A stretch of DNA of 64,000 nt, from contig JAPMXV010000045.1 of NCBI GenBank assembly GCA_026936335.1, positions 443,214 to 507,213 of the forward strand, given 5' to 3'. The position numbers were made by a program, and so were the translations under genes. Source of the DNA: Mantamonas sphyraenae STR306 (taxonomy: Eukaryota; Protista; CRuMs). The notes beneath the pieces are model-generated. The model searched no databases. It was not told the origin of the DNA and saw only the letters and a list, made by a program, of their open reading frames with translations. Positions 23,797-59,693 of this stretch are shown here, one piece after another. Numbering within the stretch: position 1 is the first letter of the stretch; each line of letters begins with the position of its first letter.

Positions 23797-26700
23797 TCAG
23801 TCCGCGTCGATTTCTGCGCAGTACGTGAACGAGTAGCGAAGGCGTTCGGCCAACACCTCCTTGCTGCTGTACCTCGGCAGGTCCAGCTGGAACGAACACG
23901 TATGCGCCACAGGAAGCGCCTGGTCCGAGTTGCGGTACGACGTGCTGATGGTGAACGTGTACGACAGGCCATCGCTTCCAGAGATCGGCAGACGCGAACG
24001 GCCCCAAACGAAGCGCAGGAACGACTGGCGTTCCTCGGGCGTAAACTCCTCCATCGCCTGCCAGAAGTTTTCGATCAGAGCGTCCGTGCGCGAGTGTCCC
24101 GAGTAGGATGTGTGTCGCTTCAGCGTCTCCACATCCACGTCGGGGATGCCGCACACACGCACTTGAAGATCTTGCCAGGTCATCAGCGAAAACAGTCGCG
24201 TCGGCACCATTGCGTTGAGGCCCTCTCGGATCCACTCGATCTGCTGGTCACACTCTGTCATACGGTACTGTTCCACCAACTCCACCCACTCGTGCCTGTT
24301 CTCAAAGGTCACACGCTTGTTTGCCCCTCCAGGCACAAGTTCCACCGTCTTGCCGTCCGAGTTGGTCGTCACAAAACGCTCGTCAATTGTGTACTGAAAC
24401 ATTTCTGCGTCTACTCCCTGCTCGTCGATGTGCAAGATGCTGTCGTTGCACTGCACCGTGCTAATGTCGATCGCCTCCAGGTCGCTGCGTGTCACAGCAA
24501 AGTTCACCAGCTTCTTCCACACAATGCTAGGGAAGCGCAGGTCCATTGCCATGGCCTGGTGCAGACCACAACCAATCAGCTTGCCGAGGAATTGGAAGAA
24601 GAGTTTGTGCTCGTCGCTCGTCAGCGACGGGTTCGGGATAAACTTGTCGCGGTTCTGGCCCAGCGAATTGTTGCTCTTGCTGTTCGGCACCGGGATGAGC
24701 AAGTAGATGTGCGGCGCATGGATCTCCTTCAACATCTCTGTGAAGGTCTCGCGGTAGGGGCCTCCAGCGTCGATGGAGTTTTCACCCGCAAAGTCCACGT
24801 GCCACGCCTGCTGGTCGGGACGCTGGCGCAGCGACTTGACTTCGTTCACCAACGCCTTGGAAATCTGACCAAACACACTTGTGCGCAGCGTGTGGTCGCT
24901 CGGCTCTTGATCCCACAGCGGCACCGTCTTGAGGCGGTCGATGTTGATGTTCGGTCGGTAGTCTCCCGTGTGTGCGAGCTTCATGCCCTCCTCCCACAGC
25001 ACCAGCTTGGGTTTCAGGAAAACCAGGCCGCGTACCTGGCTAAAGTCGTTGGCCAATGAAAACTTCTGCTCGATCTGCGTCAGGTCCACAAGCGGCAGGA
25101 ACACATTCATGCTCTCGTTCACAGTCTGCAACACAATCAGACGCCTCTGCAGCGCATGCACATCCAAGTGGTTGATCGCACGATACGGCAACAAGTCATC
25201 CTTGGTGGGCATAAACTCGTCCAGTGGGTTCACAATGTCGCTTGGGTCGCCCTCTGGCTTGCTGCGACGCACCAACGTCGTCGCCAATTCCACCAACTGC
25301 TGGTCCATAATGCGGTTGTAAGCACGCTGCTCCTTGCAGAACGCTTCAAACTCGTCTTGGCGCGTCTCCACAGCCGCCTCGGCTCCCGACGGTGTGTAGG
25401 CAGCAGGCTCGACTGTGAAGGACACACCGTGCTTCTGCACAGTGCGCGACGAATCGGACACGTCCAGTTCGCTCACAAAAGTCACGCTGTCGCCCCTGTC
25501 GTACAGGGACACGGCTGGGAAGAGCTCCTCCTGGATGCCTGCCAGTCCCTCCGTGTACGCCTTGCCCAGGTCCTTGCCGTTGCGCTCAAACTGCAGCCAG
25601 CCTTCATCTGTGTCGATGGTTACCTTGATCAAATCGTTGGTGGCCATCTTTTCGCCGTAGCTGCTGCTGCTGCCGTTGTGGTAGCGGTATCCGCTCGACG
25701 AGCCGTAGTACGACCAAGCGGACACGCCGCTGCTTCCTCCAACATAGTACGACAATGACTGCGCACGCGAACTCACGCCAATCATGATGTTGGCCGACGA
25801 ACTGGTGCTGTTGATGCGCACCGTCCACGACTGACGCCCGACCAGGCGCGTCTTGCCCAGCACTGTGCGCCACGTGGTCGAGTAGCTGTTGTTGGCCGTG
25901 GCCGTGGCCCCATCGTCGGTCAGGTCGATCTTGCCGTCGCACCAGTCGCTGTCCATCACGTAGGCGGGCTTGGACGGGAAGTGCCAGTAGAAGCGGCCGG
26001 CTGGCAGCATCAGGGTGTGCGACACAGCCTTGCCCGCCTCCTGCTCGTACGTCCAGCTGCCGAGCAGATTCTTGCCCTCGGCATCGTGGGTAAACACAAT
26101 GTGGTCGTTCAGCTCCATGTCGCAATCGTCGTCGAAGCGCACACGCACCGCGGTGACCTCGTCCATCTCCACCAGATCCGTCGTCTTGACGCTGCTGTAC
26201 GGATGTGCGCTCTCGAAGCGCACCTGTTGATCTTCGCTGCCCAGTTTCAGCAGGCACTTGATGACCAGCGAGTTGGGCAGATCGCGTTTGTACAGGGTGC
26301 TGTGGATAAAGTCGGCCACCTCGCCCACGTCGTCAAACCACTGTTCCTCTTCCTGCTGCTTGATTGCGGCGCGGCCCTTTTTGCCGCGTCGCTTGCTGCT
26401 TTCGTCGCCAGCCACCTTGAGGTGGCGCGTGGCAAGCATGAGCTCGACCAGAACCTGCAGGTACGCAGGGGGCAACGACACTTGCCACCTTCTGTGCTGG
26501 GTCGGTTCTCCATGTACAGCTTGTGCATCAGCTTGCGCATCTTGCTGATGGCCCGGATGTCCACCTCGCCACTCAGCTTGCGCAGCACCACAGCCATCAG
26601 GCGCATCACGCGCACTGTGTACGAGTTGCTCTTCTGGCCCAGGAACGTAAACATGCACGCGGCGAGACGGCCTGCGTCGTCGCTGTGCACGTCGTGCTTG

Positions 26701-29700
26701 TCGTTGGCAAACAGAGTCTCGGCCAACCAGCAGGCGAGGTCGGTGTTGGGCTTGGTCAGCGCGTCCTTGTCGTTGAGCAGCTCCACTTCGTCGGTGCTGC
26801 TCATCTTGCGCGCAACATCGACGTACTTGAAGAAGGCAGACACAATCTCCACAATGATGGCCTGTTTCAACTCCTCTGCACTCTGCTTGTGCTGCGGCAG
26901 CAGCTTCAGCAGACGGCGCTTCATCACGCTCACGGGACTGGTCGACAGCGCCAACTCTCGGTCCGACAGCTCCAGCTCGTCGTGGTTCTCCGCCGCACAC
27001 ACCTTGAGCATGGTGGCAAACACCTTTGCGCCGCCCATGGCGTCCAGGGTGAGTTCGCGGGCCTCGGATGGCCAATTTTCCATCAGGGCAAAGTAGCTCT
27101 TGCGCGCAAACATGGTGCACACCGCGTCCACGGTGTTTGTGAACTGCATGCGCAGCACATAGTCCCACGAAGGACCTCCTGCCTTGAACGTGCCGTTGAA
27201 TGGCTGTTTGCCCTTCTTGTTGCTCTTCTTGCTCTTGTCGTCGGTCTTTTCGTCCTTGTTGTTGGCCGTGCCCACAGGCAACGGGCCCGGCGAATCAAGC
27301 ACGCTGAACGCCTCGTTCTTGCCCATGTCCGGCAGCGAGCCGATGTCAAAGTCCGGCGACAGGTCGTCCTCCATGAGCTCGTCTTCGCCGTCGAGTGAGA
27401 TGTCGCCGCTGAGCGCACGCTGCAGACCGCCCTCCTCGTGTGCGTGGTCAAACAGCCAGTTGATGACCAGGTCCTGGTCGTAATCATTTTCTGGCAGGAT
27501 GTTGTTTTCGGCCAGGGCGCGGCGGCAAAGCGAAACAGGGAAGCCCAGGCAGGCGAGTTCGCTCACGCGAGCTCGTGTGATCATCTCCGGGTTGCCAAAC
27601 ACAAGGTTGGTCGAGTCCAAACTGCTGCTGGTGCTCTCCATGAAGGTGACTTGATCGTCGGCGCTGTAGAGGCTGACCGCAGGGTACACGGTGCGTCCAC
27701 ACAGATCCTTCCACACAACCTTGCCCAGGTCCGTGCCGTCGTTGTTGAAGCGCATCCAGCCCTCGTCCATGTGTACCTCCACAACGATTGTCTGGCCTGT
27801 GGCCATCGGCTTGCCGTAGTATTCGCTCGAGCTGTTGTGGTACGTGTATCCGCTGGATGAGCCGTAGTACGACCAGCCGTAGTAGGACGACGAGCCACCC
27901 AGGTAGTTGGTGCGGTCGTGGTTGGTCTCACACACGCCGATCATGATGGTGCCGCTGTACGTCTTGTCGATGTGCACCTTGAACGAATTGTACCCGCTGG
28001 TCAGGCCTTCCTTGCACCAGATGGTGCGCCAGTACGAGTAGGCCTTGTTCTTCACTGTGCGTCCGTCGTTGCTGACTTCCAAATCTGCATGCTTTCCCGT
28101 CTCGTCGAGCTTCAGTGAGGGCGCCGCGTTGCTCGCCACGCGGCGCACGGACGACGAGCCGTAACCAATGCCGTTGTGCACAACACCGCGCAGCGTGTTG
28201 CCACTCATGTCAAAGGCAATGTCACCGGAGCCCTCTTCGAAGCGGAGCAGCACACCGAGGTTCGGTGCGCCACTGAGCATGGCGCGGTAGTCGCCCATGA
28301 TGTCTTCGATCTTGCGGGCGTCGGTCCACACGCGCACCTCGTCCACCTGGCCCACAAAACCAAAGTTGATGGGCCTGCGTTCACGCTGCTCGGCCTCGCG
28401 CTGTGCGTCTTCGCTGAGCTGTTTGCGAGAGATGTCGCAGCCTTCGTCCTTGGAGCCACAGTCGCAGTAGAAGTTTGCTGCGCGGGGCGTCAGCTCGTGT
28501 CCCTGGTGACACGTCTCGGCGCAGGCCTCGCACACTCCCTTGCCACTGGTCAGCTGGCAGGTGCGGCATTCGTAGAATTCCTGGTAGACAAACTCCTTGC
28601 CCGTTTTGACAAACGTGCACACGGGCTCCGCCTCGGTGTCCTCCAGGCTTTCGTCGCCGATAAGGCCTCCGACAATCCAGTGGGAGGTCTTGACGGCGGT
28701 GAGCTTGTTGTCGGTCTTTGTGGAGTGCATGAGGTCACCGTTCTTCCAAATGCTCCAGTCGCCGTCGTAGCGGGAGGCGAGATGGATCCAGCGGCCGACA
28801 TCGCGTGTCTCGACGGGGGTAGACGCGTATGCGTGGTGGTCCTCTGCACCAGGCTTTGTGATGCCCGTCTGGAACTCGCCGTCTTGCACACGCAGAAAGT
28901 AGACAAAATTGTCGGAAATCTTGCCGCGGGACACAATGTACATGGGCTGAGTGGGCATCTCGTCCATGCGCACCCAGGTTTCGACGAGCATGGACTGGCG
29001 CGGGTCAGCAACAGCGGGCTTGCCGAGGTCGACGTACGTGTCCTGGGCGAGGTTGAGGCACATGCCCTGCTTGAAGGCGAGGAGCTCAATTGTGCGGGAC
29101 TTGGAGGCGCCAGCGACGGAGCCAACGATGCGCTCGTCGTCGAGAACCTGACACTTGTAGGTGGCAGGCACCTCCCAGTTCTTGGGGCCACGTTTGACAG
29201 AAACCTCGCGGAACTCGAGCTGGTTGCGCACGCCTACGGTGCCTTCCATGACGCAGACACACTTTTGCATGGGCCACTCGACAAGGCCCTCGAAACGCTT
29301 GTCGCCGACGCGGCGCTTGGTGATTTTGAGGACCATGGGAACGGGCAGAGCCGAGCCGTCGCGGAAGAGGCCGTTGTACTGGGTGCCCTGACGAAGGACG
29401 TCGGTGGGCACTGTCTGTGTCTGCACGCCCGTGGACGTGTCAAACAAGAGGGAGGACGGGTCATCGGGCACGAGAGCAACGTCCGCGTCGCCCACGGTCC
29501 AGACCGTGGCAAAGTACTTGCCGGGCTCGAGGACAAAGACACCGCCGAGGTAGGAGCCGTTGTGTGTGACAAAGACCTCGTTGTTGCGGTAGTTGAGTCC
29601 AAAACCAACGACGTCGCCCTCGACAATGGGTGGGATGTCAAGGTTCTCGTTGAGGGTGCCTGTGCCAGAGCCGAAGCCGCCCGAGTCCTTGGAGAAGGAG

Positions 29701-32700
29701 TAGGCGACGCGCTGGAGGGCGCCGGTGTGGTGGTAGACAAAGGAGACACGCGGGGTGGGACGTTTCTCCCTGGGATCATCCTGCCATTCGTCGCCGACGC
29801 GTTTGCGAGAGCGGAGACGGTTGGAAAGTCCGATGGCGAGTTGGGCGTGTTTGTCGAGCTTGTTGACGCGCATTTCAAAGTAGTCGATGGGCAGGCACTG
29901 GCATTGGCGCCAGCGGTCATCTGCAACAACAGCACACTTGCACGTAAGGTGCTTCATCCACTTTTGGTAGTGGACATCGTGGCCGACGTGGCACTTCTTG
30001 ATGCAGGCCTCGCAGCAGTCGAGGTCGCAGGTATTGCAGCGGTAGTTGTGCCCAGGCTGGGTGATTCCAGCGGGAGCCTTACAGTCTGCGCGAAGCGGGA
30101 AGCTGTGGTCAGCCTGGGTTGCGGTGAGGGCAGCGTCGGAGCCGCGCACAACTCGCTGCCACACATGCTGCATGTCATCGAAAGCAAGCGCGGGCACGGC
30201 GTTGTCCTCGAGCTCCGCTTCGATGGTCATGCGCTGGACGTTGGCGAGCACGCGGTCGACAACGCGTTGCTTGTTCTGCAAGCCGACGTCATCGGGAAAG
30301 CCCGGCAACAGGGTGGCGCGAGTGGCAATCTTCATGAGCAGGGGCATGTAGCCCGAGTTGATGAAGAGGGCAGCGGTCTCCTGGTTGTGCAGCATGCTGA
30401 CGAGCGCCTTCATGCCGACGGCCTGGATGACCATGAGGCTGTGGGACAGCTCGCCGTGCAGCTTGCGGTTGGCTGCGTCCATGGAGGTAAAGGGAGCAGG
30501 GCTGCTGGAAGTGGAGCTGGAAGTGGAGCTGGAAGTGGCCTTGGCCTTGCCCTTGGTGTCCACGACAGGAGTGGATACGGCAGAAGCGGACGTCTCTTCG
30601 TTGCTGAGCACGTTCTCGAGGAGGGCGGCGAAGGAGCGAAGACAGGAGTCGTCGAGAGGCAAGTCGTGAGTCTGCAGGCCGGTGTCACCGTCGAGAACGG
30701 GCTGGACGTCGGTAAGAAGGACCTGGACGGGCTGAGGGAGGACTTGTGCGGTTGCGGTGTAGCTGTCGTCAAAGAGCACGGAAACAAAGTACTCGTTGCC
30801 ACGGTAGGGGCTGCACCACTGCACGGTGGCCTCCTTGTTGACGGTGACGCCATCCTTGGTGGAGGCGACGTGGACGCGTGCGCCTGTGCGCACAATGTCC
30901 GTGAGGCCACCCATGGTGCAAAGGGCTCCGATGCATTGCTTGACCTGGTCGTCGACGAGGTACTTGTCGTTGCCGAGGGTTGCGCACAGGTCGGGCAGTG
31001 TGTCAAGGGTGGCACGGAGGGAGCCAAAGACGGCCTGCTTCCATGTGTCGCTTGTGAGGAGGGAGCGGAGGAGGCCGACCTGTTCGGCGGCAATGGCGAA
31101 GCGGTAGTCTGCGGTGTGCAACCAATTGTCGTGCGTGTGTGTGGACAGGACGTAGGCGTCGCCGATGCGTGTGAGGATGGTGCGCACCATGTCATCGACA
31201 GAGGAGGCGCCGACAGCAGCGGCGACGGTGCCCGGGTCGCCGTGCACAAAGGCGCGACGGCAGAGGCGCAGAAGGAGCACCTGGACGTCGATGTTGTCTA
31301 GGCTAGACCAGTGGCGTCCGTCATGGTTGATGAGGCGGTCGACGAGGGTGGCCCATGCAGGCTGTGCGACGATGTTTGCAGCGGCGGTGTGCTGGGTGGC
31401 GAGGAGCACGAGCTGGAGCAGGCGCTTGCAGGGGACGTCGATGTCGTCGACGAGGGCCTGGTCGGGTTGATCGGGGCAGGTTGCGGAATAGTCGACGGCA
31501 GCGAGCTGCTCCGCGGAAAGAGCACCGGGCTGGGTGCTAAAGCCGCTCAGGAAACCGTGCATGCCTGCAGCCGAGCTGTTTGCACCTCCTTGAGTGCTGT
31601 TGGAGTGGACGACGATGGGGCGTGCGCCAAGGTGCATGGGAAACCTGTGGAAGCGAATATCGATGAAATCGTAGCGGTTGCGCTTCTTGTTGGTTTTTTC
31701 GGAGCCGACGAGCTCGCCGTTCATGTAGATGGAGCAGGTGTCGTCGTCGGTGCGGGTGAAAGCGAGGTGAGTCCAGCGATGGTATTTGATGGGCCGCTTG
31801 CTGGTCACTTCTGTGGAGGAGCAGACGTTGAAGATGACGACGCCCTTGCGGTCGATGCAGGCCTGGACGGCGTAGATGTTCTGCAGGTAGGCACTGCGAT
31901 TTGTGAAAATGACACCCTGGTCGGGAGTGGGAAGCGGGTACACCCAGCAGGAGAAGGTGAAGGCCCTGCCGATGGTGGATGGGAGATGAGGGACAATGAC
32001 ACCGGGCTGCTTGGGTTCGAGCCAGATGCGCTGGGGCAACAGGAGTTGGCCTCCAAGCACACAGGTGTCAGGAACGTGGGCATCGGCGGGTGCGCAGACG
32101 CTGGCAAAGGTCGTGAGTTCGTCTTTGACCTGATCGAGCAGCGTGGACTGGAACTCAGCGCTGCTGGGTTGGCCGTGCGGGTTGAAGCGCACAGCCTGGA
32201 GGGCCATGATGTTGTATGCGTACCAAGAGGCGTCTGCGAGGGCGAGCCTGTGGCGCGTGCGAGCATGGAGGTGGTTGCCGGTATTGGCCATGCGGACGAC
32301 GGCAAGAGAGCTTGCGTGGGAGGCCGAGTTTTCTTGCAGAAAGTCGTCGATGAGCTTCTGGTCACGCTGGTGGGACGTGGATTGCCACTTGTCGCCGAGG
32401 GCACGCAAAATGCCGCTGGCAAGGAGGAACTGATGGTCCTCTGAGCGAAAGTCGATGGAGAGACAGCGAAGGGCCTGCATGTGGACGGCAGTCTCGAGAG
32501 ACATGCGAGATGAGTCGTAGAGCTCTGCGTAGGTGCCGTCGAGGACGAGCGGGTCGCTGGGGGTCTCGGCAAGGACTGTGGCGAGGGTGCCAACCAGGGA
32601 AAAGAAGGCGTTGGTGACCTCGGCACAGAGGGATTCGCCGCTGCCCTCGAGGGAGTGGAGGTAATGGAGCATCTTGGGGAAGGCCTGCTCGGTGAAGGGC

Positions 32701-35700
32701 AGGTCGTCGTCGATCTTGGGACGGGTGGAGAGAGAGTCGGCAAAGAAGCGCAGGAGCATGGCGCGGCTTTCGATGCTGACAGTGTTGCGCAGGAAGGAGG
32801 CGCCCGGATGGTCGGATGCAGCTGCCGAGGCAAAGGCGGGGCCGCGAGTGCAGGCGGCGAGGAGCTGAGAGAGGGCAGAGAGGCCTGTGGTGCGAATGAC
32901 GGCGCGTGCCTGGCGGGTGATGAGGACGTCGCGCAAGCGGCTGAGCTGGACGTCGGCCTGGACAAACTCGAGGACACGGCGTGCGGTCATGGCATCCTGC
33001 TGGGTGCTGCCGGTGCCGTCCAGGACGTCGCGGCGCTCCTTCATGAGCATCTTGAGCTTGTCGAGGGCCTCCTTGGCGTTGGAGACCTGGAGCCAAGGGG
33101 AGGCGGACCCGTCTGTAAAGTCGTCGTCTGTGGAGGCCATGGAGGCAGCTAGATCGGCGGCAGAGGAAGAGAGGGTGGTTGCAACCGAGCGGCGCGGAAG
33201 GAGTCGGTTGTGGCTTTCTGTGGGGGCGATGGTGAGGAGAAACTCTGCGCGCGTGCGGATACGTTCGGCGAGGTGGATGTACTGGCGGCGGTGGAGGTCA
33301 TCGGCACTCTCGTTGGCAGACGGGGCAGGACCTGCATCGACGCCTTTTTGGCGTTCAGAGACCATCCAGCGGACGAGCTTGTTGGCAAGCTTGTAGAGGA
33401 GCTTGAGGTTGTCTGGGCACTCTTCGTCGTCGGGGGTGCGCAGAAAGGCGATGGCGGCTGCCGTGAGGCCTTCGTGCTTGAGCATGCATGCAAAGACGGT
33501 GCGAATGGCGCGTTGGACGTGCTCCTTGGCCAGTTTGGAAGCCTTGGAGCGATCTGCGGGCAGACCCTTGGCGACGCGTACAACGAGGGGATGTGCGTCG
33601 TCCTCGATGAGCTCGACAATAAAGGTGTCACTTTCTGTGACCGCAGAGACGGTGCGCGCGATGGGCATGCGCTTGAACTGCTTCTGCGGGCGGCCTCCGT
33701 GGCGAAGGTACTCGAGCATGGGGTCCATGTCTGCAAAGCCGCCTGCAAAGAGACCATTTTGGAGCCACTTTGCAAACTGGGCTTCCTGCTTTGTGACCTT
33801 GCCACCGTGGACGAGAGTGCTTGCACACTTGCCGGTGAGCCAGGCGAGGGTCATTTGGATTTCGTTTGTGCGTCTGATGGCGCCCTCCATGGCAAATGCG
33901 ACGTTGGACAACTTGACGGAGCCGAAAAAGGCGTGCTCAGACGGGTTGACCGCGTCTGTGTTGGGTGGGTTGCTGAGAACGCGCAGATACAGACGCCCAT
34001 CTTGGGTGGAGACGCGGACCTTTGCGCTGCCGGGGCCCTCGAGGACGGCCAAGGGTCGTCGGAGCAGTCCTGGGCGAGGTGAAGCGAGACGGCGTTGTCC
34101 TTGCGATTGGAGGAGGATGAGGAGGATGAGGAGGAGGATGAGGAGGATGAGCTGGTTGGGACGGGGCCGCCGTCGAGGCGCTGGTACGTGCGCGGCGTTT
34201 GGGTGCCGACTCGTTCAAATTCGACTCCGTCGGTGTCTTCGTGGACAATGTGGCACTGGTCACACATGTCTCGCGAGGCCCAGGCGGAGGAGCGGACGTG
34301 CCAGCGGTACCCGACGATGGGTTTGACGGAGCACTCGTCACATCGGTAGCCTGTGTGGATGGTGTCTGCGGCGTCATCGGGGGAGCCAGAAGAGATTGTG
34401 TTTGTGGTGTTTGCGAGCTCGTTGAGACCGATGACGACGGTGAGGGAGGAGGCAAACGGGACGTGGATGGGCAAGATGCGGTCGAATTGCTGGAGGCCCA
34501 TGGCGTCGGGCAAGGGGATGGTCTCTGAGTGGACGGCGTTGGTCTTGATGCGAGGGGCATCGGAGCCGCGCGGAGTGACGAGGGAGCGGTCGTCGAGACG
34601 CGGGAGCTGGGCGTTGATGCGGTTCAGCTGCTGGAGGAGGGAGACAAGAGGGCCGAGGGCGCGGCTGCTGAACATGACATGAGAGGCATACAAGCAGAGG
34701 GCCGAGGTGAGGGGGAGGAGGAGCTGGCCGACGAAGCAGGCGTCGAGAAACTCGAGAATGGCCGGGTGGAGGCCCTTGTGCCACTGGCCATCCTGGAGGG
34801 AGTCGTTGATGGCCAAGGCCTGCTCAAAAATGTGCCCGGCAGAGTGTGCAAACTGCTCGACGTAGTGGACGAGGAGCTCAAGGCTTGTGTTTGGGTTCTG
34901 AACGTGCGACAGGACGGCTGAAGTGGCGGACGCCGTGTCTGCGGAGGCGGGTGCACCTGTGTCCTCTGGAGTGGCCTTGAAAAGAAGTTGCTTTTGGAGG
35001 GCAGAAAGGACTGCGAGGGATTGAGAGACGCCGATGTTGAGCTTTGCGGAGGGCACGCCGTCCTGAAAGTGTGCTTGCAAGGTCTCGCCGGTTTCCTGGC
35101 GCACGACAGAGACGAGGGTGGTGACAAAGGTGGCCACTGCGGTTGTGGATGAGGACGAGGCAGCGCCGGCGTGCGTGGACGGGGTAGCCGGGGAGGAGGA
35201 GGAGGAGGAGGAGGAGGAGGAAGAGGGGTCCTGTTGGTCGGAGCGGGCGACGTCGGTGGAGAGGAGTTTGTCGACGGTCTTGTAGGAGGAAAAGTGTCCC
35301 AGCAGATTGTCGAGGAAAGTGGCCTTTGTGGCAGAAAACTTGTCCGGGTTTTCGGAGCGGGCCTGAAGGAGGTCGGAGAGCATGGTGCCCTGCTCGACGA
35401 TGCTGGGGTAGAAGACGTTGAGGGTGCTTGTGACGGTGCGTGCGGCCTCGCGCTGGATGTCACGGATTGTCTGTGCGACGGCGGACGGGAGATCGGAGGC
35501 GGAGAATTCGAGGTTGATGATGTGCCAGAGGGTGGTGCGGATGCGGACGGCAAGGGAGTGCTCGCCGCGTGCACGGAGCCCCAGGCGCGGATCGGTTACG
35601 TCGCCGCTCTCCTGGAGGTGGTATGCGTTTGTGGCGAGCATGCCGAGGAGGGCCTTGATCTCGTAGAGGCGGAGGGACCAGGTGTGGAGCAGTTGCGGGT

Positions 35701-39310: not shown

Positions 39311-39392
39311 GGGGTGTTTTGAGTTGTTGCTGAGAAGCCGGTTTTTGGGTGACGGGGCTCGCGGGGGAACGCAAGGGAATCCTGGTTGGGTG

Positions 39393-50500: not shown

Positions 50501-53500
50501 GGAGGACGACGCCGAGCTGGAGGACAAGGTGGCCGCGGATTACAAGAAGTACGCGGAGGAAGTGACGGAGAAGGCCAACTTCCTGCTGGGCTTTGCACCC
50601 AGCGCCCGCCGCGCCAACGCCCTGCCTGCGCGCAGCGTGCAGACGACGCTGGCCAGTGCAGCCGGCGCCCTGGGCGGCAGCAGCAGTTCGCTTGGCTCGC
50701 CCGGCAGCCCGAAGCTTGGCGGCAAGTTTGCCAGTGGCTGGAACAAGGTGAAGAACGCCATGGAGGCGATGAAGAGCCTGAAGCAGATGATGAACGAGCG
50801 CGTGCAGCAGCTGAAGGGCCTGAGCGACGACGTGGACACGCTGGCTGTGTCCAAGAGCGTGCTGAGCTTTGTGGAGTCGCGTGACGTGGCGATGGACAAG
50901 CTGACGCAGGCTGTGCGTGCGCGCCAGGCACGCGCGGTGCTGCGCACGGCAGGCTTCGAGGCTGTGTCGAAGCTGCTGGGCTCGCCCGCTGTGAGCGACA
51001 GCGTGCCCCAAGAGGGCACGGACGTGTACCTGAAGAGGAGCCAGACGTCGGAGGTGCAGATCCAGGTGCTGCGTTTCATGGCCGACAAGTTTGAAACGCG
51101 CGTGGAGAACGAGGAGAGTGCAAGCCCTGGCCAGGAGGAGTACAACCACCCGGACATCCTGCACTACCTGCAGGGCGTGGACGCGTGCGGCAACGAGCTC
51201 AACTCCAAGGTGACCAACAGCTACTACAACCTGCTGCAGTCGCTGGTCGACTACATCCGCTCGATGTACCAGCCGCAGCGCCGCGCGGCTTTCGCAGGCA
51301 GCGAGCTGGACGCCCTCGCCGTGGCCCTCAAGGTCATGTGCGTGGACTACCGCGACGAAGACTCGCAGTACCTGAACGACATCGAGGTGCTGGGAGCGCT
51401 GTACCCGTTCCTTTCGTTCGAGGGCGATCTGGAGCGCGAGCAGGTCACACGGGATCTGCGCGCCGAGCGCGACGCCGCCCAGAAGGAGGGCAGCATGAAG
51501 AACGTGAAGGAGGCGCAGCTCAAGTTGGACGATTGGGAGAAGCTGAACGATCAGCTGCAGGACATCCAAGGGCAGGTCACGAGCCTGTTCCGCATCTTGG
51601 CCCTGCTGACCGTGCGCAACGACCCGGCCGGAGCCAAGGACCAGAAGACGGCCATCCACAGCCAGCGCCTGGCCGAGGATGTGTTTGACATCTTCTACAA
51701 GGAGCTGTCTGCACTGAACGAGGCGGGCAACGCGCTGTCGACCGTGCGAAGCGACAACGTGAGCGGTGGCAAGGTTGCCGAGGACTCGCTGCTGTTGCTG
51801 GACCGCGTGGCCTACCTGCATGCCACCAACGAGGGATTGAGCGTGCCGCAGGTTGACGAGGCATTCAACAACGACTTTACGGTCGGCCTGTGGATGTACA
51901 AGATCATGGGCAACAGCGGCGGTCGCATCGTGAGCAACGAGACGCCCGACGGCGACGGCAGCGCTCAGTTCACGCTGAAGCTGTACGGCAACGGCGACGA
52001 CCAAAAGGTGACTGTCGAGTGCGGCGGCCAGAGCGTGGAGAGCAGCGAGTCGATCCCGGATCGCACATGGACGCATGTGGCCGTGTCGCGCAGCGCCACC
52101 AACGGCCTGAAACTGTTCATGAACGGCAAGGAGGTGGGCGCAGCCGAGGGCGGCGAGAAGGAGGTGCCGCTGAAGCTGAGCGACTACCCCATGTACATCG
52201 GCGCCACGCCGGTGCGCATGAACGAGATGTTCACAGGCGTGGTCACGGAAGGCTTCGATGGCTTTGTGACCGAGGTGCGCTTCAGCAAGGGAGCAGCTGC
52301 GGACGAGGAGGCGCTGGGTCTGGGCGAGGGCAAGCCGGCCGAGGTGCCGTTTGCGCTGAGCGTGCCCAACCTGGTGAGCCAGAGCGTGGAGTCTGTCCTG
52401 CAGACGATGCTGCCCCTGCTGGTGCATCCGTCCGCAGCGACCCTTGTGTCCACGGGCCAGTTTGTGCAGCTGCTGCTGAGCATTGTGATGGACAACGACA
52501 TCAGCTCGTCGCCGATCAACACCAGCCTGGACAACACGGTGATGGCCATCCGCGCTTGCCGCAAGGCATTCACACGCCAGCACCCGACCGGCCTGGGCCA
52601 GATGGTGGAGACGTTTGAGGGCGTGCCCACAGTGTCTGCTGACAACCCGGCGGCTGTGCTGATCAACACCCTCCTGTGCGTGGTGGGCAACGCCTTTGCT
52701 CTGGGCGGGCAGGCGGACGCCAAGGTGCAGGTAGCCGCTCGCGCCAAGTACACGGTGGCGGCGGAGCTTGCGCTGCTGCTTCGCTCGCTGCTGTCGTGCG
52801 ACATGTGGGCCGAGGATCTGAAGCAGGCGCTGACCAACGCTCTGGGCGACATCCCGGCCGTGATGGAGAGCGTGAGCAGCGGCTCGTTTGCCATGGGTGA
52901 ACGCGAAGCGATTGTGGTGGGCGCACTCAGCGTGCTGGGTGGCCTGACCGACTGCGTGCGCACAGGCAGCCGTGTGGTGTACACCACCACTGAGGGCGAG
53001 GAGAAGACGGGTACGGTGATGTGGTACAGCGCGACCACGTCGTACGTGCCGGTGCTGCTCGACGAGACGATCAAGGCCGATTCGCAGCTGTTGCCCGAGA
53101 CCCAGCTGCTGGACCTGAGCCAGATCCGCCCCGAACTGGACGGCGACGTGGCCGTGAAGCCCGATGTGTTCCCGCTGACTGCAGGTCTGAGCGAAGCATT
53201 CGGAGCTTTGCTGAAGGCAGCTGTGCAGCGCAAGGAGGGCGAGTCGACCAACAACGGCGACTCGTCTGCGGCCAAGTTCTTCAACATCCTGCTGAGCAAG
53301 GGCCTGAAGGTGCTTTCTCTGATGTTGATCAGCACTCAGAGCGGTGACCAGTTCCTGGCCAGCGACCTGCTGTCGGATCTGATGACGCTGGCGACCAGCG
53401 CAACCAACCTGAACGCATTCCCTGAAGCGGACGTGCTGCTGACCAAGGTGCAGCGTCTGGAGGAGGCGTTGTACAACACGCGCCCTTCGCTCGAGGGCGA

Positions 53501-56500
53501 GGTGGCACGTGTGGCCATCGCGGACAACGTGAGCCGCGAGCTGGTGGTCAACACCGTGAAGAAGGGCGAGACGGAAATCGGCGTGTCGCAGATGGCCCAG
53601 CCGGTGCCGCAGTACATGCAGGGCGACGACGAGCTGCTGGCCAACCGCTACGAGGATCTGACCGCAGGCGAGAAGAACCTGCCGCCTCTGGCAGCGACGC
53701 GCGTGGACCTGTCGCACGATCTGCAGTTCCAGGGCAGCTCGGGCAGCGAGGGTGCCCCGAAGATCACCTGGTGGTCCACGGACTACGTGGAGATCACGGT
53801 GGACTCGCTGGCGGAGGGCAGCCACCTTGCGCTGGGCTATGTCACGGGCAAGATCGGCGAGAAGAAGAGCGAAGAGGACGAGGAGGAAGAGGAGGAAGGC
53901 GAAGAGCGCGTGTCGTACGTGTACGGCAACGACGGCAGCGTGCGCAAGGTGACGTTTACGTCGGATGGACGCGCCGCCGGGTTTGAGCTGACCGAGGAGG
54001 AGGTGACGGCCCTGGGCGAGGGTGCATCGTTCTCTGTGGCGACCTTTGCCGCAGGCGACGTGGTGGGCATCGGCCGCGACTACAAGAACCGTGAGGTGTT
54101 TGTGACCAAGAATGGCGAGAACCTGGGCGCGCAGTTCAGCGAGCCGTGGGGCGCCATGTGGGCGACGGTGTTTACGCAGGGCGAAGGCGTGTCCTTCAGC
54201 GTGAACGACGGCGACGCAGTGCGCTACAACGTGGACTCGCACGTGTCGTCGTCCGATGGCTCGCTGTTCAAGATGCGCCCTGGTGCGCAGTTCAACGGCG
54301 TGTACACGGCGGACGAGGACCTGGCCACCATTGAGCTGAAGATCCAAAAGGTGGACGGCCGCGATTTCTCGGGCGAGCTGAACTGGCCGTCGGAGGAGAC
54401 GGTGGTGAAGATGGAGGGTGAGCTGGGTGTGCACAACAGCCTTGTGTTCCGCGAGGTGGAAGTGCTGGAGGGCCAGAAGAACAACTGGACGTGCGGCGAG
54501 TTCAAGTGCACGATCGACGTCGATGGCAACATCCAGGGTTCGCTGGACGGGGCGGGCGAGAAGACGGTGGAGCTGGCACGCTTTGAGCGTGGCGTTGCGC
54601 TGGACTTTAGCAGCGAGGAGCACGCCTATGTGGATCTGGGCCGCGGATCGAAGCTGAACTCGGACGAGGGCCTGTTTGTGGAGATGTGGGTCAAGTTTGA
54701 CGGCATGCCGGGCGAGAACGAGGCCCAGTACCTGCTGACGCGCGGCACGAAGCACGACGACCGCCTGTTCTTTGTGCGCGTGGCGAAGCGTGAGCTGCAG
54801 TGCGGCACGTCGCGTCCGTCGAAGAAGAGCTTTGTGAAGACGGGCTACATGCTGACGGAGGAGGATGTGGGCGACTGGATGTGCGTGGGTGCCGGCTACG
54901 ACGTGGAGAGCGGCACGTGGAAGCTGTACGTGAACGGCAAGCTCAAGGGCGAAGCCAAGGCGGACAACGAGCTGGACAAGATCAAGGATCAGCGCTGGGT
55001 GGTGGGTGCATACATGGCACCTGAGGGCGAGGAGGGCTCGGACGAGGACCGCGACGCCAAGGAGAAGCACGAGACCAAGTTCAACTTCCGCGGTGTGGTG
55101 GACGAGCTGCGCATCTGGAAGAAGGTGCAACCGGAGCAGGCGATCGAGGACAACCTGCGCGCGTATGTGAAGGGCGACAAGCTGGTGGGCCTGTACTACT
55201 TCAACGAGAACGTGGGCACGACGACGCTGAACCTGGTGAACACCGAGGTGCACGGCTACGTGCATGGTGCGACTTGGTGCACAAGCACGATGAAGCGCGC
55301 GGGCAGCGGCGGATTCGACCCGACCTTCAGGACGGAGAAGCTGCACGGCGAGCTGGAGCTGAGCAACGGCAACTGCACGCTGACGCAGAAGTACACGTAC
55401 AGCGACTGGAGGACGCACCACAGCGCACAGGCCATCGAACCGGGCATGGGCACGGTCTCGTATGAGATGAAGATCGACCAGACGAGCAGTGGTACGATCA
55501 TGATGGGCGTGTGCGAGAAGGACCACAACCAGACGTACTACATCGGTGGATACAGCAACCCGAAGGGCTGGAGCTTCTACGGCTCGTCCAGTGGATACGT
55601 GTACCACGACGGCTACAGTGACTACTACGGACAGGCGATGTCGACGGGCCAGGTGATCACATGCACCGTCAACGTGGACGAGGGCTGGATCCAATGGAAG
55701 ACCAACTCGACGGAGCACCCGAAGAAGACGTACAGCGACTTGACGGGCAAGACGGTGTACGCAGGCGTGAGTCTGTACTCGCCGAACGACAAGGTGACGT
55801 TCCAGCGCGTGGGCGGCGCCGGAGGCGGTGGCGAGTCTGGCAACAAGACGTACGGCTCGCCCGAGCTTATCCGCAAGGCGCGTGTGAACAACCTGCGTGC
55901 GCTGGGCTTTGGCCAGGCGGCAGCGGAGAAGGCGCTGGACGAGGTGTGCCCCGACGTGGACGACGAGTTTGACGTGGAGGGCGTGATTGCGTGGATGATC
56001 GAAAGGAGCGCGGAGCTGGAGAACGTGGAGGACTCGACGGCGCAGGCGGAGGAGGAGGACGCACAGGAGGACCTCGTGTTTGACCTGGGCAGCCTCGGAT
56101 CGATGGGCGAGAACCAGGCGTTTGAGGTGCTGGACGCACCGGGCCAGAGCAAGAAGAAGGAGGAGAAGAAGGAGAAGAAGGAGGGCAAGGAGCGCCCGAC
56201 GCTGACCAAGAGCTTCAACGCAGGCGGACCTCTGTGGAGGACTGTGCTGCTGTCGCAGTTTGCGAGCTCGACCGAGGCACTGTGCGTTGTGTTTGCGCGC
56301 CAGGCGTTCTTTTCGCTGATGAAGAACTGGCCGAGCGCACACACGTTCAGCGTGGAGAAGCTGGGTGGCGTGAGCACGTTTACGCACCTGCTGAAGCTGA
56401 ACGCGGCGGCCTACGAGGACGACCTGGAAATGGGCGACAAGGAGATGGCGCAGTCGACATCGCCGATTGTGCTTCTGCGCAACAAGCTGGTGGAGGTTCT

Positions 56501-59500
56501 GCCGAGCGAAGACGCAGAAGCGATGAAGGTGAAGCAGGCGATTGTGCTGGAGATTGTGAGCAGCCTGATGAAGCTGATCGAGGCGCAGAGCGGCGCCACG
56601 GAGACCCAGATCAACAACGACAAGGACGCGCTGGAGAAGCCGAATGCCGCGCTTGCGTGCTGGCTCGCCGAGACGCTGTTCTCGAAGGAGTCCAACAAGG
56701 TGGCTCCGGAGGATGCACGCCGCGTGGTGAGCGTGCTGTTCACGTACCTTGCACACGGCAGCAACAACATGGGCACCCGCATCATGCGCCTGCTTGCAGT
56801 TGTGTTGCGCAGCGTGACGGGCGAGATCGACCTTCCCGCGATCAAGCAGCTGCGCAAGGCCATGTTTGAGCTGTACAAGGAGAAGGGCCCCAAGCCGGGC
56901 GCCAAGACGTTCACGCTGCCGCCTGCACACCTGCAGGTGCTGGTGGAACTGATGGTGAGCACACGCCATTTGGCAACGGGCAGCAAGAAGGCGGCACCCG
57001 CAGATGTGAAGGGCAAGGGCAAGGCCAGCGAGAGCGAGGCCGAGGTGGAGGTTGTGGAAGTGGAGGTCGAAGGCGGTGAAGGCGCAAGCAGCGGCGGTGC
57101 AAGCAGCGAGAGCGAAGAGAAGCCGAGCAGCAGCAGCGGCGACGACGACGAGACGCAGACGTGGTTTGAGGACGTGGGCGAGGTGGCCGACTTTTTGCAC
57201 GGGTCGCTGAACAACAAGCCGCTGTCGGAGACGGTGGTGGCCAAGGTGCTGATGAGGACGGACACGAGCAACAGCAAGACGTTTGAGAGCGCGCACCCGT
57301 ACAAGAAGGCTCGCAAGGGCAAGAAGATTTCGATGGAGCAGGTGACGAGCGTGAGCGTGACGCTGGACGAGAAGTGCAAGGTCGCGGAGGGCGACTACAT
57401 CTTCTTCACGCGCGACGAAGAGGGCAAGGACATGCTGGGCATGTGGACGAACCCGCCGGATGACCACGACGAGGAGAAGAAGAAGGCCGGTCGCACGTTT
57501 GAGTTTGACACGGGCAAGTTCTACTGGGTGTTCCCGTGCAAGCCGACGGTGCTGTTTGACAAGAGCACGGCACACAACGCACTGCGTGTGAGCGACGACC
57601 TGAAGACGCTGGAGGCAGACGAAAGCTACTGCACGTGGCGCTCGATCATGTGCAAGACACCTGCGCGTGGACGCTTCAGCTTCATTTGCGAGATTGAAAA
57701 GTGCCAGAGCGGCAACATCATGCTGGGCGTGAGCGAGCAGGGCCATGAGCCGAGCTACTGGATTGGCCAGACGTCGTCGACGCAGGCATGGTCGTACTAT
57801 GGCTGCAGCTACAAGTACCACGACGGAAGCAGCTCGTCGTACGGTGGCAGGATGAACAGCGGCGACACGATCACGGTGACGGTGGACGTGGACGAGGGCT
57901 GGATCTCGTTCAAGCACAACGACACGGACTACGGCAAGGCGTACGAGGATCTGCCCACGGACAAGGACCTGTTCCCTGCGATCTCCCTGTACGACGCCGG
58001 AGACAAGGTGATCTTCAAGCCGGCGAGTCTGGGCAAGGAGAACAAGAGCGAGAGCGGCAGCGCCAAGGAGTGGGGCGTGAGCTTCACGGTGAACCCGACT
58101 GGCTACACGAAGGAGGGCGCTTTGGCGGCCATGGAGAACATGAAGGGCGAGTTTGACGCGTTCCAGGAGCGCCACAGCGCGTTTGGCAAGACGGAGGACC
58201 AGCAGCTGGTGGAGGTGGCGACGAACTTTGTGCGCAAGAGCAAGCCCGACGGTGACCCGAGCGACATCAAGGACGTGACGTCGTTTGCACCGAGCAAGGA
58301 GGAGCTGCTTGGCTACCGCGCTCTGTCGGACATGGACACGTCGTTGCTGCAGGAGCGCCTTGTGGTGCTGCAGCAGATCAACGGCTCGATGAACGTGTTC
58401 CTGCCGCTTGTAGACCTGACGCAGATCGACACGCGCTTCAGCCTGGCAAACGACTTTTCGCGTGCGCGCGGCCTTGTGTTTACGGCACCGAAGTTGCAGC
58501 TGTGGCAGCAGGGTATGGACGGCACGTACTGCAGCGACTATCGCCCGGACATCACGATCAACCGCCAGAAGACGGTGGATCTGTGGGACCAGGAGCCGAG
58601 CGAGGAGACGCTGACGGGCAGTGTGTTTGGCCAGATTGCGGCAGCTCTCAAGACGCACGTGAAGAACCTGCGCCAGAGGCCGAGCAGCCAGGCGTGGCAC
58701 GTGGACTTTACCGGCGAGTCGTCGATCGACGCTGGCGGACCGTACCGTGAGACGTTCTCGCAGATGATCCGCGAGATCCAGTCGCCGCACATCGACCTGC
58801 TTGTGCATGTGGGCAACTTTAAGAGCGACAACGGTATGCACCGTGACACGTTTGTGCCGAACCCGAGCGGCAAGGGCCAGGTGTACAAGGACCACTACCA
58901 GTTCCTGGGCAAGCTGATGGGCGTGGGTCTGCGCCAGAACATGACGATGGAGCTTGCGATGTCGCCTGTGTTCTGGAAGAAGCTGGTGCAGTTCCCGGTG
59001 ACGCGTGCGGATCTGGTGGCCATGGACACGATGTGCGTGCAGTGCAACGACGCCATCGTGGACATTGACAAGAAGGGCGTGACGTCGGAGATGTTTGGCG
59101 ACGTGATTGACGAGACGTTCACGACGCATCTGACGGACGGTACAGAGGTGGAGCTTGTGGAGGGTGGCAAGCACAAGAAGGTGACGTTTGAGAACCGCCA
59201 CGAGTACGTGCGCCTTGTGGAACAGGCTCGTCTGAACGAGTTTGACACGCAGGTGGGCTGGATCCGCGAGGGTCTGGCGTGCATGGTGCCGGTGCGCCTG
59301 TTTTCGCTGTTTACGTGGCAGGACATCCAGCTGCGCATGTGCGGTGTTGCCGACGTGCCGGTGGAGCTGCTGAAGAAGCACACGTACTACAGCGGGTACA
59401 CGAAGGACAGCGAGACGGTGAAGATGTTCTGGGAGTGCATGGAGAACTACACGCCGGAGGAGAGGCAGCTGTTCCTGCGCTTTGTGTGGGGCCGATCGCG

Positions 59501-59693
59501 TCTGCCGTTGGGCGAGGACGCGAGCTACACGTTTACGCTGAGCACGGCGTACCGCAACACCGAGACTGCTCTGCCCGAGTCGCACACGTGCTCGTTCCAG
59601 CTGGATCTGCCGAGCTCGTACGGCACCACCGAGGTGATGTCGCAGCGTCTGGCGTACGCGTTCTACAACTGCGCGGATGTGGACAACGACTAA
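44570..59693 (+). CDS. Giant multi-SPRY/malectin/LamG/UBA HECT E3 ubiquitin ligase, paralog B (exons 44570-44747, 45266-45487, 45676-59693; 4,805 aa)
   Basis: Phase-consistent GT-AG splicing gives 14,418 nt. N-terminus MGNSLNKALLDEDG..DDRAWLKL matches paralog A. HECT with WHVDFTGESSIDAGGPYRE, FLRFVWGRSRLP and catalytic SHTCSFQLDLP. Confidence 0.92.

What the first reader, a model, noticed from the sequence alone, without database searches (positions are those of the whole stretch)
23797..59693. Divergent pair of giant, probably myristoylated, lectin-fold plus multi-SPRY HECT ligases flanking RPC1
Seen: two collinear paralogs (~5,070 and 4,805 aa) occupy ~31 kb in opposite orientation. Both have a 178-nt first exon with a phase-1 intron and start MG(S/N)SL..AL.DED..DDRAWL.L. 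Shared order by eye: SPRY; MYCBP2/HECTD4-like 'SDG.YVYLH..GL.K.G.G' region containing a malectin-like insert; helical scaffold; LamG; divergent SPRY; LamG; SPRY; UBA-like; 'FESAHPY' beta domain; SPRY; HERC-type HECT with catalytic Cys. No RCC1-like repeats seen. Established: MGxxxS favours N-myristoylation (A fits, B has N at position 6), malectin and ConA/LamG folds often bind glycans, SPRY domains are substrate or pathogen readers. Inference: a membrane-tethered sensor-ligase family that ubiquitylates targets on exposure of glycans or foreign surfaces to the cytosol (e.g. ruptured food vacuoles, invading bacteria or viruses). I do not recognise this architecture in a characterised protein.
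Basis: partly seen in the sequence, partly recalled or inferred. Interest (0 to 1): 0.85.

Follow-up and report, generated by a model that had tools for sequence, protein, structure and literature searches.

The report
Giant malectin-bearing HECT ligase paralogs
Two real, roughly 5,000-residue ubiquitin ligase genes at a chromosome end of the protist Mantamonas belong to a seven-member family that carries a lectin-type (malectin) domain and a conserved lipid-anchor motif, but their sugar-sensing role is unsupported.

Summary
Gene A (minus strand, 5,068 aa) and gene B (plus strand, 4,805 aa) are collinear paralogs, about 36% identical, flanking an Rpb1-family polymerase gene.

**Domains.** Pfam confirms four SPRY, two Laminin_G_3, Malectin and HECT in both. 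A also has a UBR box and a weak ZZ. The 'FESAHPY' domain is CUB-like. Malectin sits inside an unnamed beta-rich, propeller-like domain.

**Family.** The genome matches Mantamonas sphyraenae (25.06 Mb, 78 contigs). It holds seven malectin-HECT loci. Six start MGxxx[S/T/N] with a shared acidic W/F-L motif, and so does a 6,685-aa environmental homolog. One NMT gene is present, so N-myristoylation is well supported.

**Class.** The C-terminal module is HECTD3-like (class I). No RCC1 or DOC domain is present.

**Glycan sensing.** Unsupported. The domain is truly malectin-homologous (E 1.6e-20), but five of the six sugar-contact residues of Xenopus malectin could be aligned, four are lost, and one is uncertain.

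**Gene integrity.** An intron-spliced contig confirms A's 178-nt first exon. One of A's two frame breaks is absent from independent contigs.

**Location.** B ends 4.1 kb from the telomere. 5'-truncated copies of its 3' end lie in at least ten other contigs, near the contig end wherever that could be checked.

**Verdict.** This is a new variant of a known kind. Other first readers of this scan noted the paralogs elsewhere in the genome.

The parts
23797..39310 (-). Gene A, 5,068 aa: exon 1 39133-39310, intron 38824-39132, exon 2 23797-38823
38824..39132 (-). A intron 1 (309 nt, GT..AG, phase 1), skipped in contig of run X3
   Evidence: table 5
34047..34051 (-). A frame break 1 (assembly lacks one base); contigs of runs X1 and X2 have G>T at 34047 and an extra A after 34050, which restores the frame
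26478..26499 (-). A frame break 2 (single base, between ..STEGGK and SLPPAYLQ..); not checked against reads
38345..38689 (-). A SPRY 1
   Evidence: 61.6 bits
35975..37357 (-). A beta-rich propeller-like domain with malectin insert (Malectin 36380-36772)
34250..34360 (-). A ZZ-type zinc finger, weak (19.5 bits, cut-off 21.4)
31683..32000 (-). A Laminin_G_3 no. 1
29496..29882 (-). A divergent SPRY 2 (24.3 bits, just under cut-off)
28446..29045 (-). A Laminin_G_3 no. 2 (28665-29045) followed by UBR box (28446-28619)
27438..27983 (-). A SPRY 3 (27642-27983) and weak UBA-like (27438-27569)
25873..26232 (-). A CUB-like 'FESAHPY' domain
23815..25830 (-). A SPRY 4 (25474-25830), helical linker, HECT (23815-24660); catalytic Cys codon 23896-23898
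39937..44379 (+). Rpb1-family RNA polymerase largest subunit (main ORF; RPC1-like); its 5' end abuts A's ATG, and its stop lies 190 bp before B's ATG
44570..59693 (+). Gene B, 4,805 aa: exons 44570-44747, 45266-45487, 45676-59693
45300..45938 (+). B SPRY 1, split by intron 45488-45675
46845..48185 (+). B beta-rich propeller-like domain with malectin insert (Malectin 47436-47798)
51828..52298 (+). B Laminin_G_3 no. 1
   Evidence: 63.3 bits
53790..54200 (+). B divergent SPRY 2
   Evidence: 35.7 bits
54621..55139 (+). B Laminin_G_3 no. 2
   Evidence: 33.4 bits
55458..55988 (+). B SPRY 3 (55458-55802) and weak UBA-like (55893-55988)
57267..57626 (+). B CUB-like 'FESAHPY' domain
57690..59672 (+). 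B SPRY 4 (57690-58013), helical linker, HECT (58764-59672); catalytic Cys codon 59589-59591
59879..64000 (.). Subtelomeric repeat shared with many contig ends (59879-63796) and TTAGGG telomere (63797-64000)

Best explanation
A and B are sister paralogs in a lineage-expanded family of giant class I (HECTD3/HERC1-type) HECT ubiquitin ligases. The genome matches the published Mantamonas sphyraenae assembly. It holds seven malectin-HECT loci, and relatives exist in M. plastica and in one unidentified environmental eukaryote.

Shown here:
- Each protein ends in a CUB-like domain, a SPRY, a helical linker and a HECT domain with the catalytic Cys. This module would take ubiquitin from an E2 as a thioester and pass it to bound substrates.
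- Upstream, a long helical scaffold carries three more SPRY domains, two ConA-like/LamG domains and a beta-rich propeller-like domain into which a true malectin homolog is inserted.

Inferred:
- These beta-sandwich modules are substrate or adaptor readers.
- The conserved Met-Gly-x-x-x-Ser/Thr/Asn start is N-myristoylated by the single NMT of the genome. That would give a weak or switchable membrane anchor, or an intramolecular one (odds about 0.7).
- The malectin domain has lost most of the di-glucose contacts of ER malectin. It more likely binds a protein or a different ligand, as plant malectin-like domains do.
- Paralog-specific zinc modules (UBR box and ZZ in A) diversify target choice.
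- A is most likely intact and expressed.
- B is the last gene before the telomere, and chromosome-end copying has spread fragments of it.
For: Gene models and collinearity. Pfam domains above cut-offs. Catalytic motif in all seven paralogs.

C-terminal module: the closest solved relative is HECTD3 by sequence (E 5.7e-56 over 460 residues). It is also closest by fold (model pLDDT 81.9; 9r85 E 2.3e-30). In the HECT tree, the malectin-HECT group sits with fish HERC1 and with Thecamonas and oomycete giant HECTs in a clade with SH-aLRT 99. A and B are sisters at 94.

Family: seven Malectin hits, all in giant frames that end in HECT. Four of the five other loci are collinear with B along their whole length. 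P0154 (6,685 aa; Pfam HECT, LamG3, ZZ, SPRY, Malectin) is collinear with B. A Mantamonas plastica transcript fragment has the same propeller + malectin unit.

Myristoylation: six of six N-termini found, plus P0154, fit G-{EDRKHPFYW}-x2-[STAGCN]-{P} despite 22-36% overall identity. NMT is present once.

Malectin homology: Pfam E 1e-15. Family profile against malectin 2k46, E 1.6e-20. Model top hit is human malectin 9ikp, TM 0.67.

Expression and integrity of A: a contig with the intron removed, and the frame restored at break 1.

Organism: 25,061,354 bases, 78 contigs, GC about 59%, against PMC10492846.
Against: No biochemical or localisation data exist. Myristoylation is inferred from sequence only, and the residues after the motif are acidic, which does not favour binding to anionic membranes. 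A's second frame break (about 26490) was not checked against reads, so A could be broken in this strain. No expression evidence was obtained for B. The class I placement rests on a quick tree of about 300 columns with many unresolved forks, and it has no HECTD4, HERC2 or HECTD3 row. The propeller-like domain has no named family, and its model was built from only nine sequences.
Confidence: 0.8

Rival explanations
1. These are membrane-tethered sensor ligases whose malectin and LamG domains bind glycans that become exposed to the cytosol (ruptured food vacuoles, invading microbes), which triggers ubiquitylation.
For: The malectin and ConA-like folds are genuine. The myristoylation motif is conserved. 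The organism is a bacterivorous flagellate (PMC10492846). From established knowledge, cytosolic glycan-reading E3 systems exist in animals (SCF-FBXO2/6/27). Family expansion and a subtelomeric position fit a fast-evolving recognition repertoire.
Against: Xenopus malectin contacts Glu87, Tyr89, Tyr116 and Phe117 are replaced by non-equivalent residues in nearly all seven paralogs. Tyr67 is uncertain. Plant malectin-like domains with the same losses bind peptides or proteins (FERONIA/ANXUR hits). SPRY, LamG and CUB domains in cytosolic E3s are usually protein binders. There is no localisation or induction data.
Confidence: 0.12
2. Paralog A is a recently inactivated pseudogene with two frameshifts, and only B is functional.
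For: Two single-base frame breaks in the assembly. In this GC-rich genome long stop-free frames arise by chance: the antisense ORF of B is 4,328 aa.
Against: At break 1, contigs of two independent runs carry the extra base that restores the frame. A contig with the first intron removed shows that A is transcribed and spliced. The assembly is PacBio/FALCON, where single-base deletions are a common error. A keeps 51% identity to B in the C-terminal module, and all catalytic motifs.
Confidence: 0.1
3. They are simply orthologs of an already characterised ligase (HERC1, HECTD3 or HECTD4) with the same domains.
For: The C-terminal module is closest to HECTD3, and fish HERC1 matches at 33-34% over SPRY + HECT.
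Against: No RCC1-like, WD40 or DOC/APC10 domain was found. The malectin, LamG3 and CUB-like modules and the myristoylation exon are absent from the Pfam lists of the HERC1 hits. No paper in the library combines HECT and malectin in one protein. HECTD4 itself could not be compared.
Confidence: 0.04

Closest known systems
HECTD3 (human; PDB 9r85)
   Same: It is the closest solved relative of the last 460-800 residues. The layout is the same: a beta-sandwich, a helical linker, then HECT with a C-lobe Cys.
   Different: HECTD3 is 861 aa and has a DOC/APC10 sandwich. Here a CUB-like domain and a SPRY take that place, preceded by about 4,000 further residues.
HERC1 and class I 'large HERC-related' HECTs (Grau-Bove et al. 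2013, PMC3673628)
   Same: SPRY next to HECT, giant size, and the same HECT clade in the tree.
   Different: No RCC1-like domains or WD40 repeats. Malectin, LamG3, a CUB-like domain and a myristoylation exon are present instead.
Uncharacterised protist class I families HECTEx1 / HECTHe1 (Laminin_G3 + SPRY) and the Thecamonas clade (SPRY, ZZ, zf-UBR)
   Same: The same domain vocabulary, and the same SPRY-HECT C-terminus at 33-41% identity (Aphanomyces, Percolomonas, Thecamonas hits).
   Different: None of those hits lists Malectin. Oomycete members carry MIB_HERC2. None is characterised. Orthology was not resolved.
Malectin (ER lectin; PDB 2k46, 9ikp) and plant malectin-like receptor kinases
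   Same: Homologous domain and fold.
   Different: ER malectin is lumenal and membrane-anchored and binds Glc2-N-glycan through Y67/E87/Y89/Y116/F117/D186. Here the domain is an insert in a cytosolic-type ligase and most of those residues are lost, as in FERONIA/ANXUR.

Membership tests
HECT E3 ubiquitin ligases (PF00632) | HECT domain above the Pfam gathering score | tested here: met
   A 233 bits, B 201 bits against a cut-off of 23.9
HECT E3 ubiquitin ligases (PF00632) | Catalytic cysteine in the C-lobe | tested here: met
   HTC(S/F/Y)F(Q/T)(L/V)DLP in all seven paralogs
HECT E3 ubiquitin ligases (PF00632) | Ubiquitin thioester formation and transfer | not testable with these tools
   Needs an in vitro assay
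Class I HECT (HERC1/HERC2/HECTD3/HECTD4 group) | HECT domain groups with class I members rather than other classes | tested here: inconclusive
   A clade with SH-aLRT 99 includes fish HERC1 and excludes plant UPL1 and eight other Mantamonas HECTs. HECTD3 is by far the best PDB match. No HECTD4, HERC2 or HECTD3 rows were in the tree.
HERC1/HERC2 | RCC1-like domains | tested here: not met
   No RCC1 Pfam match in A or B at E up to 1
HECTD3 | DOC/APC10 domain before HECT | tested here: not met
   No APC10 match. A CUB-like domain and a SPRY occupy the position.
HECTD4 (KIAA0614) | Collinear full-length similarity | not tested
   No HECTD4 sequence came up in any search, and none is solved.
Malectin domain (PF11721) | Domain above cut-off and malectin fold | tested here: met
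   A 51.8 and B 57.8 bits against a cut-off of 23. Profile E 1.6e-20 to 2k46. Foldseek top hit 9ikp.
Malectin (functional ER lectin) | Sugar-contact residues Y67, E87, Y89, Y116, F117, D186 of Xenopus malectin | tested here: not met
   E87 aligns to T/A/A/G/C/Y/G and Y89 to E/L/M/I/M/Y/A across the seven paralogs. Y116/F117 align to non-aromatic residues in nearly all. Y67 is uncertain and D186 is outside the alignment (residue list from PMC13335976).
Malectin (functional ER lectin) | Signal peptide and lumenal location | tested here: not met
   The N-terminus is MG plus an acidic stretch. There is no N-terminal hydrophobic segment, and no hydrophobic segment conserved between A and B.
N-myristoylated proteins | Gly2 and the consensus G-{EDRKHPFYW}-x2-[STAGCN]-{P} | tested here: met
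   A, B, C74, C61, C51, C54 and P0154 all fit. No such start was found for C46.
N-myristoylated proteins | NMT enzyme in the genome | tested here: met
   One PF01233 match, 244 bits
N-myristoylated proteins | Lipid actually attached | not testable with these tools
   Needs metabolic labelling or mass spectrometry
CUB domain (PF00431) | Match to the CUB profile | tested here: inconclusive
   No direct Pfam hit in B. hhalign gives 97.7% probability to homologous segments, of which five of six are Pfam CUB. Only the first ~80 columns align.

The most novel reading that the evidence does not exclude
The seven-member family is a myristoyl-anchored, fast-diversifying recognition repertoire. Its malectin, LamG and SPRY modules would read non-self or damage-exposed surfaces (glycans or proteins of prey bacteria, ruptured phagosomes) and mark them with ubiquitin. 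The subtelomeric position of B, and the spread of its fragments to at least ten other contigs, would reflect contingency-gene-like turnover. If so, this would be a single-chain cytosolic pattern-recognition ligase in a deep-branching eukaryote.
Probability: 0.12. Interest if true: 0.85.

Novelty: new variant of a known kind. Interest (0 to 1): 0.5.

Why it matters
HECT ligases choose targets through their N-terminal modules. A malectin domain is otherwise known from the ER lumen, plant receptor ectodomains and secreted bacterial enzymes. No paper in the searched library describes one in a HECT ligase, and here it is combined with a conserved lipidation motif. If the domain binds a ligand in the cytosol, it would add a recognition mode to the ubiquitin system. 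CRuMs branch near the base of Amorphea, so the family also bears on how early giant multi-reader E3s arose. Separately, the chromosome-end copies of B give a clear example of subtelomeric duplication acting on a large gene.

Tried and rejected
- **Full-length word-based search with B's exon 3.** It gave only three remote hits covering 10% or less.
- **The same tool on the propeller/malectin part.** It gave nothing. Given the word filter, this blank means little.
- **Exhaustive profile search with the propeller + malectin alignment.** It was swamped by multi-malectin proteins that match only the malectin part of the profile. Only P0061 matched the whole profile.
- **Profile of the first two blades against the PDB.** It gave only weak, repeat-driven matches to clostridial cell-wall-binding beta-hairpin repeats, with per-domain E of 1 or more. 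I reject this as pattern similarity, not homology. Pfam had nothing for this region.
- **Contig look-ups.** Encoding contigs of P0061 were not on record. P0154 was too long for the tool.
- **Thecamonas trahens as the source organism.** I considered this because of the 2013 survey. Its HECT protein is only 40-43% identical to anything in this genome, so I rejected it.
- **A transmembrane reading.** One hydrophobic window in B (residue 2459, hydropathy 1.91) has no counterpart in A, so I rejected it.
- **Programmed -1 frameshifting at A's breaks.** There is no slippery heptamer, and break 1 is absent from other contigs, so I rejected it.
- **Method limit.** The joined (spliced) protein models of A and B were used only inside local scripts, for coordinates and collinearity. 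All database, family and structure tools received single exons or open frames by reference, so the exon 1-2 junction was never searched or folded.
Full report
**1. Is it there?**

Yes. The window is about 60% GC.

Gene B, on the plus strand, starts at ATG 44570. Its first exon is 178 nt and ends before GTGAGT. The next exons are 45266-45487 and 45676-59693. Joined in a local script, they give 4,805 codons with no internal stop.

Gene A, on the minus strand, starts at ATG 39310. Its first exon is also 178 nt and ends before GTACGT. tblastn of B against the A region gives collinear matches from residue 1 to 4805, at 28-56% identity per segment and about 36% overall.

A changes reading frame twice, by one base each time, near 34050 and near 26490. 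With an N placeholder at each break, the model is 5,068 aa.

The ORF between the two genes has Rpb1 domains 1-5 and no Pol II-specific domains. It is 'RPC1-like', but I did not separate it from Pol I.

**2. Independent read-level evidence**

Three public runs hold this stretch. I laid them on 33800-39500.

- A contig of run X3 joins 38823 to 39133 and skips 309 nt. The ends read CT..AC on the plus strand, which is GT..AG on the gene's strand. This is exactly the predicted first intron of A, so A is transcribed and spliced.
- That contig reaches 23 nt upstream of the ATG, and no earlier ATG lies in that stretch.
- Contigs of X1 and X2 read straight through the intron. At frame break 1 they carry G>T at 34047 and an extra A after 34050. 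With these changes the frame runs on as ..DCSDDPLAVLEGPGSAKV...
- Break 1 is therefore either an assembly error or an allele difference, not a fixed lesion.
- Break 2 could not be checked.

**3. Organism**

The genome handle has 25,061,354 bases in 78 contigs. That matches the FALCON assembly of Mantamonas sphyraenae: 25.06 Mb, 78 primary contigs, GC 59.19%, PacBio polished with Illumina (PMC10492846). The only protein that matched the whole propeller + malectin profile comes from the Mantamonas plastica transcriptome. A Thecamonas HECT is only 40-43% identical to anything here, which rules out that species.

**4. Anatomy**

Pfam matches above their cut-offs, in both proteins:

- SPRY near the N-terminus
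- Malectin
- Laminin_G_3
- a divergent SPRY
- a second Laminin_G_3
- SPRY
- SPRY
- HECT

No RCC1, WD40 or APC10 domain was found. A alone has a UBR box (38.8 bits) directly after its second LamG, and a weak ZZ (19.5 bits, cut-off 21.4). UBA-like matches are below the cut-offs in both.

The 'FESAHPY' domain aligns by hhalign at 97.7% probability (E 1.8e-12) with ES.HPY-containing segments of homologous giant HECTs. Five of six of those segments are Pfam CUB. I therefore call it a truncated CUB-like sandwich.

The malectin domain is inserted between blades. An AlphaFold model of B residues 524-970 has pLDDT 76.7 and pTM 0.78. Its top hit is human malectin (TM 0.67 by target). GH2 CBM57 modules and FERONIA/ANXUR follow, then assorted beta-propellers at low TM. 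This domain has no Pfam family and no meaningful PDB sequence match.

The last 816 residues fold with pLDDT 81.9 as CUB-like sandwich, SPRY, helical linker and HECT. The best match is full-length HECTD3 by fold (E 2.3e-30) and by sequence (E 5.7e-56, extending well upstream of the HECT domain). The catalytic motif HTC(S/F/Y)F is present in both genes.

**5. The family**

The genome has about 40 HECT loci. It has seven Malectin hits, and every one lies in a giant frame that ends in HECT: A, B, and loci on contigs C74, C61, C51, C46 and C54.

- C74, C61, C51 and C54 are collinear with B along their whole length. C46 is more divergent.
- In a quick maximum-likelihood tree of the HECT domain, the seven loci and P0154 fall in one group (SH-aLRT 90). 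That group lies inside a clade (99) that also holds fish HERC1 and the Thecamonas, oomycete, Percolomonas and Blepharisma giant HECTs.
- A and B are sisters (94).
- Outside the genome, P0154 (6,685 aa, JGI/IMG, unknown eukaryote) carries Pfam HECT, Laminin_G_3, ZZ, SPRY and Malectin, and is collinear with B.
- Other named relatives of the C-terminal module lack malectin. They are oomycete MIB_HERC2 + LamG3 + SPRY proteins, Percolomonas UBA + ZZ + SPRY + UBR proteins, and HERC1.
- The 2013 HECT survey had already listed uncharacterised class I protist families with Laminin_G3 + SPRY, and a Thecamonas clade with SPRY, ZZ and zf-UBR. It did not mention malectin (PMC3673628).
- A full-text search for HECT + malectin + SPRY found no relevant paper.

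**6. N-myristoylation**

The start codons found for six paralogs give these N-termini:

| Locus | N-terminus |
|---|---|
| A | MGSSLS |
| B | MGNSLN |
| C74 | MGANNS |
| C61 | MGNTNT |
| C51 | MGNNLT |
| C54 | MGGVSS |

Each is followed by an acidic stretch, and in five of the six (all but C54, whose first exon is shorter) by a (D/E)D..(W/F)L(R/K)(L/M) motif. P0154 starts MGNHIT and has DSAWIEM. All fit the PROSITE myristoylation pattern, although the proteins are only 22-36% identical overall. One NMT gene is present. Conservation of this kind is good indirect evidence. Whether the lipid anchors the protein to a membrane is inference, and the acidic neighbourhood argues for at most a weak or regulated anchor.

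**7. Is the malectin a lectin here?**

Homology is solid. A profile of the seven domains hits Xenopus malectin at E 1.6e-20, FERONIA at 8e-9 and GH2 CBM57 at 4e-6.

The sugar contacts reported for Xenopus malectin are Tyr67, Glu87, Tyr89, Tyr116, Phe117 and Asp186 (PMC13335976). They map with a constant offset of 23 onto chain 2k46. In the family alignment:

- Glu87 aligns to T/A/A/G/C/Y/G.
- Tyr89 aligns to E/L/M/I/M/Y/A.
- Tyr116/Phe117 align to non-aromatic residues in nearly all members.
- Tyr67 lies in a loop whose alignment is uncertain.
- Asp186 falls outside the aligned part.

The canonical di-glucose site is therefore not kept. Plant malectin-like domains show the same pattern and bind peptides or proteins.

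**8. Chromosome context**

A's ATG lies roughly 100 bp from the start of the polymerase gene, which runs the other way. B starts 190 bp after that gene's stop.

B's stop (59693) is 4.1 kb from a TTAGGG telomere at 63797-64000. The stretch 59879-63796 is a subtelomeric repeat found at many contig ends at 88-91% identity.

5'-truncated copies of B's 3' end lie in at least ten other contigs: C24, C76, C73, C12, C70, C22, C5, C10, C16 and C14. They are 96-98% identical, 0.1 to 4.1 kb long, and nearly all share the end point about 155 bp past the stop. Wherever contig lengths or low coordinates allow a check, they sit within about 13 kb of a contig end; for several (C24, C12, C22, C16) the contig length was not seen. 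Older internal fragments (78-88% identity) occur on C54, C75, C29, C76 and C73. A shared distal end with variable proximal end points fits chromosome-end copying that starts from a B-like end.

**9. Verdict**

- **Shown:** gene structure, domains, catalytic motif, family membership, conservation of the lipidation motif, expression of A, and loss of the malectin sugar contacts.
- **Inferred:** substrate reading by the beta-sandwich modules, lipidation and its role, and the ligand of the malectin insert.

It works like a class I HECT ligase. It is not a member of HERC1/2 (no RCC1-like domain) or of HECTD3 proper (no DOC domain). I rate it a new variant of a known kind, with interest 0.5.

**10. 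Method note**

The spliced, joined protein models were built only inside local scripts. Every database, family, structure and homology tool received single exons or open frames by reference. The exon 1-2 junctions were therefore never searched or folded.

Noticed in passing
window 55714-59848; G000 C24:125272-129379, C76:165318-169459, C73:9104-13224, C12:249556-251550, C70:297468-299281, C22:220245-221908, C5:4197-5522, C10:287415-288331, C16:311371-312578, C14:4039-4133: 5'-truncated copies of the 3' end of gene B, 96-98% identical and 0.1-4.1 kb long. Nearly all share the same distal end about 155 bp past the stop. Where contig lengths or low coordinates allow a check, they lie next to the terminal subtelomeric block. 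Some keep an open SPRY-HECT frame (for example 800 aa on C76).
   Followed up: partly
window 59879-63796 and 63797-64000: A block of about 4 kb shared at 88-91% identity by many contig ends, some of them in two tandem copies, followed by a TTAGGG telomere. Gene B is the last unique gene on this chromosome arm.
   Followed up: partly
G000 C54:13460-18219, C75:199831-204614, C29:5823-10724, C76:162462-164804, C73:13738-16080: Older copies (78-88% identity) of the middle of gene B (window about 50147-54996), with internal deletions. Several are near contig ends.
   Followed up: no
window 46842-59828, minus strand: A 4,328-aa stop-free ORF lies antisense to gene B. It is most likely a by-product of GC-rich codon usage, and it shows that ORF length alone is no evidence of a gene in this genome.
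   Followed up: no
window 34047-34051: The primary assembly differs from short-read contigs of two runs by a substitution plus a one-base deletion. About one substitution per 500 bp separates the runs, which fits a heterozygous diploid. Single-base frame breaks in this assembly should not be read as pseudogenes without checking reads.
   Followed up: yes
window 39311-39450: Gene A and the Rpb1-family polymerase gene start within roughly 100 bp of each other on opposite strands, a likely bidirectional promoter. The polymerase gene opens with a GAT/GAC (Asp)-rich run.
   Followed up: no
whole genome G000: About 40 HECT loci in a 25-Mb genome, at least 21 of them with the HECTD3/HERC1-like C-terminal module. 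This is a large expansion for a small free-living flagellate.
   Followed up: partly
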